Origin: Zancudomyces culisetae HAW-14-8
Taxonomy: Eukaryota; Fungi; Kickxellomycota
Reading direction: 5' to 3'
Length of the DNA: 64,000 bases
Assembly: GCA_052426225.1 (NCBI GenBank)
Contig: JBNJNM010000008.1
Coordinates: forward strand, 868,001 to 932,000
The notes under the pieces are model-generated. The model was not told the origin of the DNA, did no database searches, and saw only the letters and a list, made by a program, of their open reading frames with translations. This document shows positions 50,278 to 54,305 of this stretch, piece after piece. The position numbers were made by a program, and so were the translations under genes. Within the stretch, counting starts at the first letter, position 1, and each line of letters starts with the position of its first letter.

Positions 50278-52926
50278 ATGGGTAAGTTTATTAATCTTAT
50301 TGCACTCGGGGTTATTGTTACCCAAGACTTGAACATTGCTTCAGCATTTGCCATAAAAGACAGACTAGTAAAAAGACAAGAGTATGCTTATCCAAATGGA
50401 TCCACTGAAACACCAGTGAATATATACAACACCGCATCAACTTGGACAACAGCTGGATACCCACCAGCCCCAACAACCACAGCTGGATACCCACCAGCTC
50501 CAACAACCACAGCTGAGTATCCACCAGCTCCAACAACCACAGCTGGATACCCACCAGCTCCAACAACCACAGCTGAGTATCCACCAGCTCCAACAACCAC
50601 AGCTGGATACCCACCAGCTCCAACAACCACAGCTGAGTATCCACCAGCTCCAACAACCACAGCTGGATACCCACCAGCTCCAACAACTACAGCTGAGTAT
50701 CCACCAGCCCCAACAACCACAGCTGGATACCCACCAGCTCCAACAACAACCACAACTGGCTATCCACCAGCTCCAACAACAACAACAGGCTATCCACCAG
50801 CCCCAACAACAACAACAACCGGCTATCCACCAGCCCCAACTACAACCACAACCGGCTATCCACCAGCCCCAACTACAACAACTGGATACCCACCAGCCCC
50901 AACAACCACAACTGGATACCCACCAGCCCCAACAACCACAACTGGATACCCACCAGCCCCAACAACCACAACTGGATACCCACCAGCCCCAACTACAACC
51001 ACAACTGGATACCCACCAGCCCCAACAACAACCACAACTAGATACCCACCAGCCCCAACAACCACAACCGGCTATCCACCAGCTCCAACTACAACCACAA
51101 CCGGCTATCCACCAGCTCCAACTACAACCACAACTGGATACCCACCAGCTCCAACTACAACCACAACTGGATACCCACCAGCCCCAACAACAACCACAAC
51201 TAGATACCCACCAGCCCCAACAACCACAACCGGCTATCCACCAGCTCCAACTACAACCACAACCGGCTATCCACCAGCTCCAACTACAACCACAACTGAA
51301 TACCCACCAGCTCCAACAACAACCACAACTAGATACCCACCAGCCCCAACAACCACAACTAGATACCCACCAGCCCCAACAACCACAACTGGATACCCAC
51401 CAGCCCCAACTACAACCACAACCGGCTATCCACCAGCTCCAACTACAACCACAACCGGCTATCCACCAGCCCCAACAACCGAAGATAGTTGTGAGGGAAC
51501 CTCTACAGTCTATGTAACAGTTACTGCTACGCTTAACAGTCTTTGTACGGCAACATCTACTATTTACACAACACTAACAGCATTAACAACAAGTACCAAA
51601 TACGAAACAGTTACTGTAACAAGCAGCAGCACTACTACTTTCACGTCAACAACCACAACCGGCTATCCACCAGCTCCAACAACCACAACCGGCTATCCAC
51701 CAGCCCCAACAACCACAACCGGATACCCACCAGCTCCAACTACAACCACAACTGGCTATCCACCAGCCCCAACAACCACAACCGGATACCCACCAGCTCC
51801 AACTACAACCACAACCGGCTATCCACCAGCTCCAACAACCACAACCGGCTATCCACCAGCTCCAACTACAACAACTGGATATCCACCAGCCCCAACTACA
51901 ACCACAACTGGATACCCACCAGCTCCAACAACAACCACAACTGGATACCCACCAGTCCCAACAACCACAACCGGCTATCCACCAGCTCCAACAACAACCA
52001 CAACTGGATACCCACCAGCTCCAACAACAACCACAACTGGATACCCACCAGCTCCAACTACAACAACCGGCTATCCACCAGCTCCAACAACAACCACAAC
52101 TGGATACCCACCAGCTCCAACTACAACCACAACCGGCTATCCACCAGCCCCAACAACCACAACCGGATACCCACCAGCTCCAACTACAACCACAACTGGA
52201 TACCCACCAGCTCCAACAACAACCACAACTGGATACCCACCAGCTCCAACAACAACCACAACTGGATACCCACCAGTCCCAACAACCACAACCGGCTATC
52301 CACCAGCTCCAACTACAACCACAACTGGATACCCACCAGCTCCAACAACAACCACAACTGGATACCCACCAGCTCCAACAACAACCACAACCGGCTATCC
52401 ACCAGCTCCAACAACAACCACAACTGGATACCCACCAGCTCCAACAACAACCACAACTGGATACCCACCAGCTCCAACAACAACCACAACTGGATACCCA
52501 CCAGTCCCAACAACCACAACCGGCTATCCACCAGCCCCAACTACAACCACAACTGGGTACTCACCAGCTCCAACAACCACAGCTGAATACCCACCAGCTC
52601 CAACAACCACAGCTGAGTATCCACCAGCCCCAACAACCACAGCTGAGTATCCACCAGCCCCAACAACCACAGCTGAGTATCCACCAGCCCCAACAACCAC
52701 AGCTGAGTATCCACCAGCCCCAACAACCACAGCTGAGTATCCACCAGCCCCAACAACCACAGCTGAGTATCCACCAGCCCCAACAACCACAGCTGAGTAT
52801 CCACCAGCCCCAGCAACCACAGCTGAGTATCCACCAGCCCCAACAACCACAGCTGAGTATCCACTAGCCCCAACAATTTCAGCTGAATATCCTGGCGCAA
52901 CATCATCTCCAATACTCACTTATTAA
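50278..52926 (+). CDS. Secreted Tyr/Pro/Thr-rich tandem-repeat protein (extensin/mucin-like, putative adhesin)
   Basis: Hydrophobic N-terminus, dibasic LVKR site, ~70 [G/E/R]YPPAPT(3-5) units in two blocks around a two-Cys spacer, no C-terminal GPI or TM segment. Variation between repeats is mostly at third codon positions in this frame. Confidence 0.85.
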   Translation: MGKFINLIALGVIVTQDLNIASAFAIKDRLVKRQEYAYPNGSTETPVNIYNTASTWTTAGYPPAPTTTAGYPPAPTTTAEYPPAPTTTAGYPPAPTTTAEYPPAPTTTAGYPPAPTTTAEYPPAPTTTAGYPPAPTTTAEYPPAPTTTAGYPPAPTTTTTGYPPAPTTTTGYPPAPTTTTTGYPPAPTTTTTGYPPAPTTTTGYPPAPTTTTGYPPAPTTTTGYPPAPTTTTGYPPAPTTTTTGYPPAPTTTTTRYPPAPTTTTGYPPAPTTTTTGYPPAPTTTTTGYPPAPTTTTTGYPPAPTTTTTRYPPAPTTTTGYPPAPTTTTTGYPPAPTTTTTEYPPAPTTTTTRYPPAPTTTTRYPPAPTTTTGYPPAPTTTTTGYPPAPTTTTTGYPPAPTTEDSCEGTSTVYVTVTATLNSLCTATSTIYTTLTALTTSTKYETVTVTSSSTTTFTSTTTTGYPPAPTTTTGYPPAPTTTTGYPPAPTTTTTGYPPAPTTTTGYPPAPTTTTTGYPPAPTTTTGYPPAPTTTTGYPPAPTTTTTGYPPAPTTTTTGYPPVPTTTTGYPPAPTTTTTGYPPAPTTTTTGYPPAPTTTTGYPPAPTTTTTGYPPAPTTTTTGYPPAPTTTTGYPPAPTTTTTGYPPAPTTTTTGYPPAPTTTTTGYPPVPTTTTGYPPAPTTTTTGYPPAPTTTTTGYPPAPTTTTTGYPPAPTTTTTGYPPAPTTTTTGYPPAPTTTTTGYPPVPTTTTGYPPAPTTTTTGYSPAPTTTAEYPPAPTTTAEYPPAPTTTAEYPPAPTTTAEYPPAPTTTAEYPPAPTTTAEYPPAPTTTAEYPPAPTTTAEYPPAPATTAEYPPAPTTTAEYPLAPTISAEYPGATSSPILTY
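50452..52890 (+). repeat. Coding minisatellite, 30/33-bp units with a 60-bp higher-order repeat at the 5' end, interrupted by a unique spacer ~51481-51650
   Basis: Units such as ggatacccaccagctccaacaaccacaact. The lines starting 50521 and 50581 are identical, as are those starting 52621, 52681 and 52741. Confidence 0.97.
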
Positions 52927-53324
52927 GAATGACCATATAACCGCTTCTCTACAAAGTTGCCACACTTCTGGTTTTTGCGACTTCCATCATAAACACATGT
53001 TATTAACTGTACAATTCTTATTGATTGTTAGTACCATGTTTTCCCCCCCTTTAACAGATTATCTACATAACTAACTTTTTAGCTTTGTTTATTCAGTGCT
53101 TAGGATATAGTTACCACAACAATAACAATTAAATAAAACTTACATGAAACTAGCTTGCAAACCATAATTGACATTTACCACCCTTTAATGCGCCAAAAAT
53201 GTCAGATTGTTGATTATATTTGGAAATATTTCACTCACTTTATTTTGATATAAAAATGTGCTAAAAAAAACTAAATCTTATACTGCTGTAACTAAAATAA
53301 ATGAGATAGCTTAAGTGTCATAAC

Positions 53325-54305
53325 TTATTTAGCGTAGCACTTGGTGACATAGTGCACCTGAGTAGTTGTATAAACTGATGAAGTTGGTGGTGTTGGTGGT
53401 TGAGAGTTACACTGGACGCTAAGGCTATTAACATGCATTGTATACACAGTGTTTGGACCCCATGGAGTAGGAGTACCTGCCCATTGGGCAGTTCCATCCT
53501 GTCCTGAGTTTCCACCATCCCAGATCGAGAAGAAAAGTGAGTATTTAGTTCCAGGGAACTTGTATGTGTTGGTTGCGGCATCAAAAGTGCTTTGTTTTGT
53601 CAGTACTCTAGCTACTTTTCCGTCAACAATAAATTGCATTGAATCTTGGCCAACTACAAATGTGTAATCATGGAAATCTGCGGAGGTATTAGCACCAACA
53701 TCATGTGAAACCATGTTTGTGTAGTCTAAAACACCATTCCAGTAATAGTTTGTTTGAACTTCATTTGGCGATTTTCCTACCCATTCGAAATCCAATTCAT
53801 CACCATTGTTGTTATTGCGTAGCGCAAATGCTGACACAACACCTGGTGCAACACTTGCTGTTTTAATTCTAGCAGTATACGTGCCTACTCCAATATCGGA
53901 GTTGAGCATGACTGTGGACCCAAATCCCTTGTTGTTACCACCATTTGCCATACTCACCACTAGGTTTCCATTGGCAATTGAGGCGTTATCCGGCTGGAAG
54001 GTAGAGATAAATGGTGTGCTATCTGAGGATCCTGAGACATTAACTATGTTTTTCAAGCTAGATGAATCCTGGAATGTATAAGCCCGATTCTGGCATGTCT
54101 GAGCCGCCCAGCAGCTTTGAGGTGAGAAAGAGTTTGCAATTTCACACACGCCTGCCATACAATAGTTTGCGTCAGAGTTACAATACCCCTCTCGACAACA
54201 TGGTGAAGTAGATGGGCAATCCTGATCCCCACACTTCCCTGCTGCATATCTGCTGATACAAAGTATTGAGCCCAAAAGCACTGTTACTATTTTCTTATGC
54301 ATCAT
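53325..54305 (-). CDS. GH16 Crh/Utr2-like chitin transglycosylase with N-terminal chitin-binding (CBM18-like) module
   Basis: Signal peptide, CG..CP..SPCC..GYC..YC..C module, GVVSAF..GDELDFEWVG (ExDxE catalytic motif), EVQTNYY, DFHDYT, SIWDGG..GTAQWAG. Confidence 0.92.
   Translation of the reverse strand: MMHKKIVTVLLGSILCISRYAAGKCGDQDCPSTSPCCREGYCNSDANYCMAGVCEIANSFSPQSCWAAQTCQNRAYTFQDSSSLKNIVNVSGSSDSTPFISTFQPDNASIANGNLVVSMANGGNNKGFGSTVMLNSDIGVGTYTARIKTASVAPGVVSAFALRNNNNGDELDFEWVGKSPNEVQTNYYWNGVLDYTNMVSHDVGANTSADFHDYTFVVGQDSMQFIVDGKVARVLTKQSTFDAATNTYKFPGTKYSLFFSIWDGGNSGQDGTAQWAGTPTPWGPNTVYTMHVNSLSVQCNSQPPTPPTSSVYTTTQVHYVTKCYAK

What the first reader, a model, noticed from the sequence alone, without database searches (positions are those of the whole stretch)
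50278..54305. Candidate fungal adhesive module: secreted YPPAPTTT-repeat protein tail-to-tail with a chitin-binding GH16 cross-linker
Seen: an 882-aa protein with a signal-like N-terminus, a KR site and ~70 Tyr-Pro-Pro-Ala-Pro-Thr(n) units, with no GPI or TM anchor. It converges about 400 bp from a CBM18-GH16 Crh enzyme, and the pair is flanked by 2-3 kb gene-free gaps. Established: regularly spaced Tyr in YPP/Pro-rich repeats mediates oxidative cross-linking or adhesion in plant extensins and in mussel foot protein-1 (AKPSYPPTYK), Thr runs are O-mannosylation sites, Crh enzymes graft chitin onto glucans, and Harpellales attach to the chitinous insect gut lining with a secreted holdfast. Inference: the repeat protein is an adhesive, holdfast or spore-appendage matrix protein fixed by dityrosine/DOPA chemistry, possibly co-deployed with the chitin-binding enzyme.
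Basis: partly seen in the sequence, partly recalled or inferred. Interest (0 to 1): 0.8.

Follow-up and report, generated by a model that had tools for sequence, protein, structure and literature searches.

The report
Secreted tyrosine-proline-threonine repeat protein, gut fungus
The mosquito-gut fungus Zancudomyces culisetae really does encode a secreted 882-residue protein built from 72 near-identical Tyr-Pro-Pro-Ala-Pro-Thr units. It is most likely a sugar-coated, cross-linkable surface or matrix polymer, but nothing ties it to the neighbouring chitin-remodelling enzyme or specifically to the attachment glue.

Summary
Window 50278-52926(+) is an intact 882-codon ORF in Zancudomyces culisetae (Harpellales; long-read assembly). 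It has:
- a signal-like N-terminus (ASA|F) and one KR site;
- 72 YPPAP units spaced 10 or 11 residues apart;
- one 60-residue Cys/Thr/Val spacer;
- no hydrophobic C-tail.

Differences between units are mostly synonymous, so the frame is under coding constraint. The stop codon lies 398 bp from a convergent 326-aa GH16 Crh2-like gene. That enzyme's N-terminal Cys module is only weakly hevein/CBM18-like.

The "module" reading is not supported:
- a 729-aa paralog on another contig has no GH16 neighbour;
- the Smittium GH16 ortholog has different neighbours;
- the two promoters share no motif.

No ortholog was found in two very large protein libraries. No RNA run was listed.

The cross-linking chemistry is feasible. 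The genome holds at least 6 signal-bearing tyrosinases, 8 O-mannosyltransferase loci and P4H-type domains.

This scan had already flagged several other secreted Tyr-rich repeat families elsewhere in this genome, so this gene is one candidate among many.

Verdict: a real, lineage-restricted, mucin/extensin-like secreted polymer. A holdfast role is plausible but untested.

The parts
50278..50346 (+). Signal-like N-terminus (aa 1-23): K3, hydrophobic core F4-V14, A-S-A at positions -3 to -1
   Evidence: Sequence read directly, with a hydropathy peak of 2.86. The public annotation of another strain uses the same start (P0071). SignalP was not run.
50347..50376 (+). Short pro-region ending in K32-R33, the only dibasic site (a Kex2-type site by inference)
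   Evidence: Sequence read directly. There is no other KR/RR/KK in the mature chain.
50377..50454 (+). Unique N-terminal stretch (aa 34-59) with the single N-x-S sequon (N40)
   Evidence: Sequence. No Pfam hit.
50455..51480 (+). Repeat block 1 (aa 60-401): 9 'A-type' units (G/E-YPPAPTTTA), then 24 'T-type' units (G/R/E-YPPAPTTTT(T), the last cut short at the spacer)
51481..51660 (+). Central spacer (aa 402-461). It holds the only two Cys of the mature protein (C405, C423) and beta-branched T/V/I stretches (TVYVTVT, ETVTVT).
   Evidence: No Pfam family. The paralog has analogous Cys/TVTVT spacers.
51661..52884 (+). Repeat block 2 (aa 462-869): 28 T-type units, then 11 A-type units. Seven of the A-type units are an identical 30-nt unit that also occurs once in block 1.
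   Evidence: order of DNA unit types.
52885..52926 (+). Non-hydrophobic C-terminal tail ending in Tyr, plus the stop codon
   Evidence: The tail is conserved in the other strain.
52927..53324 (.). 398-bp convergent intergenic region
53325..54305 (-). Neighbouring GH16 Crh2-like gene (326 aa). Signal-like aa 1-23; Cys module aa 24-73 (54087-54236); GH16 domain aa 99-276 (53478-54011); DEXDXE motif aa 169-174 (53784-53801). No Ser/Thr stalk and no GPI-like tail.

Best explanation
The gene encodes a secreted, unanchored, mucin/extensin-like structural glycoprotein.

Shown:
- An intact ORF under coding constraint.
- A signal-like N-terminus and one KR site.
- 72 G/E/R-YPPAPTTT(T)(T) units and no C-terminal anchor signal.
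- A second family member in the same genome.
- Genes for O-mannosyltransferases and for signal-bearing tyrosinases in the genome.

Inferred mechanism:
1. The signal peptide and the short pro-region are removed.
2. The Thr runs are O-mannosylated. With three Pro per unit, this keeps the roughly 850-residue chain extended and resistant to proteases. Every Tyr is followed by Pro, and the mature repeats contain only 4 Arg and 1 Lys.
3. The Tyr that recurs every 10-11 residues is the reactive or sticky element. It could be oxidised by secreted tyrosinases or oxidases to DOPA/quinone or di-Tyr cross-links, or it could stack on polysaccharide. Either would make the polymer insoluble in an extracellular layer such as the outer wall coat, the holdfast cement or spore-associated matrix.
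4. The central Cys pair and the T/V-rich segment could provide dimerisation or beta-aggregation.

Which extracellular structure it sits in is not known. The adjacency to GH16 is most likely incidental.
For: - The ORF and repeat anatomy are real.
- Coding constraint: there are 33 distinct DNA units among 70. Pairwise codon differences are 6434 synonymous against 1331 non-synonymous. Tyr is kept in 70 of 70 units with both codons in use, and all unit lengths are multiples of 3.
- The same start and N-terminus, and the same C-terminal tail, are kept in a strain that is 98.85% identical.
- A 729-aa paralog has a signal-like start, GYPTVAPTTTTT units, Cys/TVTVT spacers and a C-terminal Tyr.
- AlphaFold2 gives no fold (mean pLDDT 31, no secondary structure). 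This fits an extended or disordered chain.
- The genome has 8 full-length PMT loci, at least 8 tyrosinase-domain loci of which at least 6 have signal-like N-termini, multicopper oxidase hits and P4H-type domains.
- Harpellales spores release a glue whose molecular identity is open (PMC5954228).
Against: - There are no expression or protein data, and no RNA run was listed.
- No ortholog was found outside Z. culisetae, so conservation cannot speak to function.
- The chain is neutral to acidic with no Lys in the repeats, unlike cationic wet adhesives. Dense glycans next to each Tyr might shield it from oxidases.
- Heavily glycosylated mucin-like chains can be lubricating or protective rather than adhesive.
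- The secretion call is heuristic. The single-sequence AlphaFold2 result is weak evidence.
- The scan's earlier notes list several other secreted Tyr-rich families in this genome, so nothing singles this one out.
Confidence: 0.55

Rival explanations
1. Dedicated holdfast or spore glue. The protein is stored and released at spore extrusion or thallus attachment, then cured by secreted tyrosinases into a DOPA/di-Tyr cement on the hindgut cuticle.
For: - The organism has a glue-releasing attachment stage.
- The protein is secreted-looking and unanchored, with periodic Tyr.
- At least 6 signal-bearing tyrosinases are encoded.
- Both family members sit behind long ORF-poor upstream regions, 2.9 kb and more than 8 kb. 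That would suit tightly regulated genes, but this is an inference.
Against: - No stage-specific data are available.
- There are no Lys or cationic residues.
- Many other Tyr-rich secreted candidates occur in the same genome.
- No ortholog was detected in other Harpellales.
Confidence: 0.18
2. Functional two-gene module. The repeat protein and the adjacent chitin-binding GH16 transglycosylase are co-deployed, for example with the enzyme fixing the polymer or the wall to chitin.
For: - The two genes converge with 398 bp between stops and are set off by gene-free gaps.
- This GH16 is the soluble paralog, with no stalk or GPI signal.
- A second GH16 paralog lies 6.6 kb from another secreted Tyr-rich repeat gene.
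- In Smittium angustum a secreted P/Q-rich repeat protein lies two genes from the GH16 ortholog.
Against: - The paralog on contig C11 has no GH16 within the 15 kb examined, and none of the five GH16 loci is on C11.
- The Smittium neighbours, their order and their orientation all differ, and its repeat protein is unrelated.
- There are no shared upstream motifs (longest shared word 12 nt, within the null range).
- Crh enzymes act on polysaccharides, and no protein substrate is known (PMC6458159).
- The other GH16 loci have no such neighbour.
Confidence: 0.08
3. Passive protective coat. The protein is a protease-proof, hydrated glycocalyx that shields hyphae or spores from gut proteases and alkaline pH, with Tyr playing no chemical role.
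For: - Every Tyr is followed by Pro, and the repeats hold only 4 Arg and 1 Lys.
- Thr is 37% of the chain and there are 8 PMT loci.
- The chain is predicted to be disordered.
Against: Tyr is kept in 70 of 70 units despite synonymous drift, and is also kept in the diverged paralog. That argues that Tyr itself is selected.
Confidence: 0.15
4. Not a gene: a coding-looking minisatellite whose open frame is a by-product of the repeat.
For: Other frames of the array are also open for 120-390 codons. There is no family hit and no RNA evidence.
Against: - Only this frame has an ATG with a signal-like start and ends in unique sequence.
- Synonymous differences far outnumber non-synonymous ones.
- Only 30- and 33-nt units occur.
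- The ends are conserved in a second strain.
- A diverged paralog keeps the same protein design.
Confidence: 0.03

Closest known systems
Fungal tandem-repeat Ser/Thr-rich (mucin-like) secreted and wall glycoproteins, such as Flo11, the Als stalks and Metarhizium Mad1
   Same: It shares the signal peptide, the long O-glycosylatable Thr-rich tandem array, repeat differences between strains, and short beta-prone T/V/I segments like the amyloid cores of Als adhesins (PMC9306254).
   Different: It has no GPI signal, no Pir repeat and no globular ligand-binding head. It has a strictly periodic Tyr-Pro-Pro core and no sequence homology.
Plant extensins / hydroxyproline-rich glycoproteins
   Same: Both are Pro-rich extended rods with regularly spaced Tyr that can be cross-linked oxidatively, and both are glycosylated between the Tyr positions.
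   Different: It has no SPPPP blocks and no YXY motif. Thr would carry the glycan rather than hydroxyproline. There is no homology, and the oxidases available here would be tyrosinases rather than class III peroxidases. This comparison rests on general knowledge.
Mussel foot protein-1 (about 80 decapeptides, AKPSYPPTYK)
   Same: It shares the unit length, the copy number and a Tyr-Pro-Pro core next to Thr, and tyrosinase-type enzymes are available in the genome.
   Different: It has one Tyr and no Lys per unit and is not cationic. The only Pfam repeat hit (PF25296 'Decapeptide repeat region') scores 17 bits against a cut-off of 45. Modifications are untested.
Pro-Thr linkers (Pfam PF04886 PT repeat) of secreted glycoside hydrolases
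   Same: The composition is similar, and these are what the database searches actually retrieve with the paralog.
   Different: Those are short linkers between domains and lack Tyr. Here the repeat is the whole protein.
Crh2/Utr2-type chitin transglycosylases (GH16_19: CBM18 + GH16), for the neighbouring gene
   Same: It shares the GH16 fold, and the DEXDXE motif is present. The order signal / Cys-rich module / GH16 is the same. AfCrh5 (6ibu) is among the best sequence and fold matches.
   Different: There is no Ser/Thr stalk or GPI signal. The Cys module is only marginally hevein-like. The second Crh motif reads GTAQWAGT rather than GTIXWXGG.

Membership tests
Fungal GPI- or Pir-anchored wall mannoproteins / adhesins | N-terminal secretion signal | tested here: inconclusive
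   The n/h/c layout and A-S-A site are visible, but no SignalP-type predictor was available.
Fungal GPI- or Pir-anchored wall mannoproteins / adhesins | Ser/Thr-rich tandem repeats | tested here: met
   72 units, Thr 37%.
Fungal GPI- or Pir-anchored wall mannoproteins / adhesins | C-terminal hydrophobic GPI signal or Pir (DGQ-type) repeats | tested here: not met
   The tail ...SSPILTY is not hydrophobic. Only two Gln occur in the whole protein (Q16, Q34), so no Pir motif is possible.
Plant extensins | SPPPP(P) blocks and YXY / VYK cross-link motifs | tested here: not met
   Ser is 1.8%. No SPPP or YXY occurs in the repeats. No Pfam hit at E <= 0.01.
Mussel foot protein-1 type adhesive | Tandem decapeptides with a Tyr-Pro-Pro core | tested here: met
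   10/11-residue units, YPP in 69 of 70 parsed units.
Mussel foot protein-1 type adhesive | Lys-rich cationic units with two Tyr each; sequence relatedness | tested here: not met
   No Lys in the units and one Tyr per unit. PF25296 scores 17 bits against a cut-off of 45.
Mussel foot protein-1 type adhesive | DOPA and hydroxyproline in the mature protein | not testable with these tools
   Only feasibility was checked: tyrosinase and P4H-type domains are encoded in the genome.
Kex2-processed repeat proteins (Rep1 / RiPP-type precursors) | Dibasic sites between the repeat units | tested here: not met
   A single KR lies at residues 32-33, ahead of the array. The four R-type units carry a lone Arg.
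Crh chitin transglycosylases (GH16_18/19), neighbouring gene | GH16 beta-jelly-roll with a DEXDXE catalytic motif | tested here: met
   PF00722 at E 1e-32. D169, E170, D172 and E174 are invariant in 24 homologs. The model has pLDDT 84 and matches 6ibu and other GH16 structures. The motif definition comes from PMC6458159.
Crh chitin transglycosylases (GH16_18/19), neighbouring gene | GTIXWXGG motif | tested here: inconclusive
   Here it reads GTAQWAGT, matching 4 of 6 fixed positions. This variant is conserved in zygomycete homologs.
Crh chitin transglycosylases (GH16_18/19), neighbouring gene | CBM18 (hevein) module after the signal peptide (GH16_19) | tested here: inconclusive
   Pfam Chitin_bind_1 gives E 1.8, and 5 of 24 homologs match with best E 0.016. 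A profile search against PDB sequences gives 12 hits, 11 of them hevein-type, but all at E 0.4-10.
Crh chitin transglycosylases (GH16_18/19), neighbouring gene | Chitin-to-glucan transglycosylase activity | not testable with these tools
   This needs an enzyme assay.
Co-deployed gene pair / functional cluster | Linkage conserved in paralogs or related species | tested here: not met
   The C11 paralog is not next to a GH16. The Smittium angustum GH16 ortholog has other neighbours.
Co-deployed gene pair / functional cluster | Shared regulation | tested here: inconclusive
   No shared upstream words beyond chance. No RNA run was listed.

The most novel reading that the evidence does not exclude
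This protein, with its C11 paralog, is a fungal counterpart of extensin or mussel-type curing polymers. It would be a glycosylated polyproline rod whose periodic Tyr is oxidised by the fungus's own secreted tyrosinases to cement Harpellales spores or thalli to the chitinous hindgut lining. That would make it the first molecular component of the long-unknown trichomycete holdfast glue. It was invisible until long-read assembly, because the array broke the short-read assembly at both ends.
Probability: 0.15. Interest if true: 0.8.

Novelty: new variant of a known kind. Interest (0 to 1): 0.45.

Why it matters
The glue that fixes Harpellales to insect guts has been described by microscopy, but its molecules are unknown. 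The only published candidate is a fasciclin-domain protein (PMC5954228).

Genes like this one were split across contig ends in the short-read assemblies used for earlier comparative genomics, so they were never considered.

A Tyr-periodic, O-glycosylated, unanchored polymer together with a family of secreted tyrosinases gives a concrete, testable hypothesis for extracellular curing chemistry in an early-diverging fungus.

Against that, the genome holds several such candidate families. This gene alone is a lead, not an answer.

Tried and rejected
1. Family scans. Pfam gave nothing above cut-off for the repeat protein, its N-terminus, its spacer or the paralog.
2. Word-index search of 5.8 billion proteins with the whole protein. 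It returned 4 low-complexity hits and no relative.
3. Exhaustive HMMER search of 1.84 billion representatives. It returned 636 hits. Among the best 150, only the same gene's 116-aa fragment from the other strain is a true match. The rest are compositional, and only three unrelated proteins carry any Tyr-Pro repeat.
4. The same word-index search with the paralog. It returned only PT-repeat linkers.
5. ESM Atlas look-alikes. The best score was 0.88, unnamed clusters, a lead only.
6. RNA evidence. No run was listed.
7. AlphaFold2 of the whole protein. No confident structure.
8. Shared promoter words between the repeat gene and GH16. None above chance.
9. Shared flanks between the two paralogs. 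None.
10. Kex2-processed polyprotein reading. Rejected because there is only a single KR site.
11. Spurious-ORF reading. Rejected on codon evidence.
12. tRNA and Rfam features in the gaps. None.

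
Full report
**Identity of the DNA**

The 326-aa GH16 protein of the window is 100% identical over its aligned part to 'putative glycosidase crf2 [Zancudomyces culisetae]'. The window is G000:C8:868001-932000 of a 27.09-Mb, 25-contig assembly. The older short-read assembly (strain COL-18-3) is 98.85% identical over 11.4 kb of this locus. 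The organism is therefore a Harpellales mosquito-gut symbiont. Its spores are reported to release a glue in the gut (PMC5954228).

The ORF 50278-52926(+) encodes 882 residues. Tandem Repeats Finder finds one array at 50449-52876 with a 30/33-nt period. Parsing gives 72 Tyr-Pro-Pro-Ala-Pro cores, spaced 10 residues (38 times) or 11 residues (32 times), with a single 68-residue gap.

The layout is as follows.

| Residues | Feature |
|---|---|
| 1-23 | Signal-like: K3, hydrophobic F4-V14, A-S-A |
| 24-33 | Short stretch ending in K32-R33 |
| 34-59 | Unique stretch with one N-x-S sequon |
| 60-401 | 9 'A-type' units (G/E-YPPAPTTTA), then 24 'T-type' units (mostly G-YPPAPTTTT or TTTTT; four start with Arg; the last is cut short at the spacer) |
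| 402-461 | 60-residue spacer |
| 462-869 | 28 T-type units, then 11 A-type units |
| 870-882 | 13-residue non-hydrophobic tail ending in Tyr |

The spacer holds the only two Cys of the mature chain and beta-branched runs such as TVYVTVT. The composition is Thr 37%, Pro 25%, Ala 11% and Tyr 9%. There is no Lys in any unit.

**It is a gene, not just a minisatellite**

- The 70 regular units comprise 33 different DNA sequences.
- Tyr is kept in 70 of 70 units, using both codons (37 TAC, 33 TAT).
- The three Pro positions are kept in 209 of 210 cases.
- Pairwise codon differences are 6434 synonymous against 1331 non-synonymous. Most of the non-synonymous ones fall at the first (G/E/R) position.
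- Unit lengths are only 30 or 33 nt.
- In the other strain the same N-terminus (P0071, 116 aa, at a contig end) and the same C-terminal tail (a 119-aa fragment at another contig end) are present.

The short-read assembly therefore broke on both sides of the array. The full protein is absent from both protein libraries searched.

The order of G and E units at the N-terminal end, and the number of A-type units at the C-terminal end, differ between the two assemblies. This may be real strain polymorphism or a short-read artefact at contig ends.

**A small family, apparently confined to this species**

A six-frame search of the genome finds one more locus, G000:C11 (L022:3480-5669). It encodes a 729-aa ORF with a signal-like start, GYPTVAPTTTTT and related units, several Cys/TVTVT spacers and a C-terminal Tyr. 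The two genes share no flanking DNA.

Neither protein has a detectable ortholog. The word-index searches return only Pro-Thr linkers and other low-complexity proteins. In the exhaustive profile search, only the gene's own fragment is a genuine match among the best 150.

Caveat: other Harpellales genomes are mostly short-read assemblies, where such arrays collapse, and unannotated genes are not in these libraries. Absence is therefore weak evidence.

**The neighbouring enzyme**

The gene at 53325-54305(-) has the following features:

- A signal-like start.
- A 50-residue Cys module.
- A GH16 domain (PF00722, E 1e-32).
- The catalytic D-E-x-D-x-E motif, invariant in 24 zygomycete homologs. That motif is one of the two Crh signature motifs (PMC6458159).

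A model built with an alignment reaches pLDDT 84 and matches GH16 structures, including the Crh5 transglycosylase 6ibu.

The Cys module is conserved in position and Cys pattern across Kickxellomycotina, Glomeromycotina and Mortierellomycotina homologs. This is the architecture described for GH16_19 (CBM18 + GH16; PMC6827312). Its assignment to CBM18 is only suggestive, however:

- Pfam gives E 1.8.
- 5 of 24 homologs match, with best E 0.016.
- A profile search of PDB sequences gives 12 hits. Eleven are hevein-type domains, but all are at E 0.4-10.

Two paralogs in the genome (386 and 400 aa) carry a Ser-rich stalk and a hydrophobic C-tail. The window's copy and its best Smittium angustum match (P0024, 47% identical) lack both. 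This is therefore a soluble Crh2-like enzyme.

**Is the pair a module?**

The geometry is as described. The stops are 398 bp apart. The flanks, about 2.9 kb and 2.06 kb, hold no ORF over 83 aa, no tRNA, no Rfam hit and no publicly called gene. Every test of linkage that I could run came out negative or neutral:

- The C11 paralog has no GH16 near it. The five GH16 loci lie on C8 (two), C13 and C9 (two).
- The S. angustum ortholog sits among an FSH1 hydrolase, an FKBP/NPL protein and glycogen synthase.
- The 2-kb upstream regions of the two genes share no word longer than chance predicts. The longest is 12 nt, against a null mode of 11-12. Shared 10-mers number 11 against a null mean of 10.

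Two observations keep a weak form of the idea alive:

- In S. angustum, a 904-aa secreted Pro/Gln-rich repeat protein lies two genes upstream of the GH16 ortholog.
- In Z. culisetae, the GPI-type paralog at C8:1.647 Mb lies 6.6 kb from a secreted Tyr/Lys-rich repeat protein of more than 1,296 residues.

Such repeat genes appear common in this genome according to the scan's earlier notes. Chance therefore explains these cases adequately.

**Feasibility of the proposed chemistry**

| Enzyme family | Finding in the genome |
|---|---|
| Tyrosinase | At least 8 domain loci; six intact ORFs of 366-493 aa start with signal-like sequences, and five of them share the C-terminal ending GYVSPY(I/L) |
| Multicopper oxidase | Domains at 2 loci (3 matches) |
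| P4H-type 2OG-Fe(II) oxygenase | Domains at 4 loci (6 matches) |
| Protein O-mannosyltransferase (PMT) | 8 full-length loci |

Extracellular Tyr oxidation and dense Thr mannosylation are therefore enzymatically plausible. None of these genes is linked to the locus. Tyrosinases also serve melanin synthesis, and tyrosinase enrichment in Zoopagomycota has been discussed in that light (PMC10079182).

**What it most likely is**

The design is a secreted chain with no anchor, about 770 residues of Pro-stiffened and Thr-glycosylated repeats, one conserved Tyr per unit, and one small Cys/beta-prone spacer. This is the design of an extended extracellular structural polymer.

Every Tyr is followed by Pro, and the repeats contain four Arg and one Lys. 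By inference from protease specificities, the chain should resist the chymotrypsin- and trypsin-type enzymes of the larval gut.

The invariance of Tyr in both diverged paralogs argues that Tyr is the functional residue. It would be either a cross-linking point or a stacking surface.

Single-sequence AlphaFold2 gives no structure (pLDDT 31). This is consistent with an extended chain, but only weakly.

I therefore commit to this reading: a mannosylated, protease-resistant, Tyr-cross-linkable matrix or surface polymer (confidence 0.55). The specific holdfast-glue version is at about 0.15-0.2. The GH16-partner version is below 0.1.

**Comparison with known systems**

It works like fungal mucin-type wall proteins, plant extensins and, in unit length and YPP core, mussel foot protein-1. 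It is a member of none of them:

- It has no GPI or Pir anchor.
- It has no SPPPP or YXY motif.
- It has no Lys.
- It has no family hit above cut-off.
- It is not a Kex2-processed polyprotein, because there is only one dibasic site.

**Novelty and score**

The full-length protein is not in the protein libraries I searched and has no detectable relatives outside the species. Its Tyr-periodic, unanchored design is unusual for fungi. I class it as a new variant of a known kind.

It bears on an open question, the molecular nature of trichomycete attachment. However, the evidence is purely sequence-based, and the proposed gene pairing is unsupported. The scan has already flagged several other Tyr-rich secreted families in this genome as glue candidates (s1-666760, s1-634529, s1-676041, s1-639038). 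Interest: 0.45.

No spliced model was needed, because both genes are single ORFs.

Noticed in passing
G000:C8:1440526-1442007 (L023:1327-2808), G000:C8:1368985-1370346 (L024:1330-2691), and loci L029-L032: There is a family of at least 6 tyrosinase-domain proteins (366-493 aa) with signal-like N-termini. Five of them share the C-terminal ending GYVSPY(I/L). At least 8 tyrosinase loci exist in a 27-Mb genome.
   Followed up: partly
G000: C21 (4 loci), C11 (2), C15, C8:1908365: There are eight full-length protein O-mannosyltransferase (PMT) loci. That is many for a reduced genome and fits the abundance of Thr-rich secreted proteins.
   Followed up: no
L022:3480-5669 (G000:C11:814479-816668): This is the 729-aa paralog, with GYPTVAPTTTTT units and several Cys/TVTVT spacers. 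It is preceded by more than 8 kb without any ORF over 96 aa and followed by a reverse-transcriptase-like ORF fragment (L022:5864-6232).
   Followed up: partly
L003:5578-8292 (Smittium angustum MBFU01000993.1): A 904-aa secreted-looking Pro/Gln/Tyr-rich repeat protein, with an assembly gap inside it, lies two genes upstream of the GH16 ortholog. It is unrelated in sequence to the window's repeat protein.
   Followed up: partly
L034:1-3890(-) and L035:459-1619(+) (G000:C8:1637000-1648619): A secreted Tyr/Lys-rich repeat protein of more than 1,296 residues (KYYESKYY-type units) lies 6.6 kb from the GPI-type GH16 paralog. It belongs to the Tyr-rich cluster that this scan followed up earlier (s1-666760).
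   Followed up: partly
L002:11233-11594 and L042:6001-6349 (LSSK01001083.1 and LSSK01000244.1): The public short-read assembly ends inside the array on both sides, so the gene is annotated there only as 119-aa and 116-aa fragments. Unit order and number at both ends differ from the long-read strain.
   Followed up: yes
window 54087-54236(-) and alignment A2/A3: The N-terminal Cys module of zygomycete Crh2-like GH16 enzymes is conserved from Mortierellomycotina to Kickxellomycotina. Coemansia and relatives have replaced the second Cys of the Cys-Cys pair (PCF/PCY/PCS).
   Followed up: partly
window 50455-52884: The array is mirror-like at the protein level: A-type units at both ends, T-type units inside, and the spacer in the middle. 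One identical 30-nt unit occurs once in the first A-block and seven times in the last. Higher-order 4-5-unit duplications occur inside the T-blocks.
   Followed up: yes
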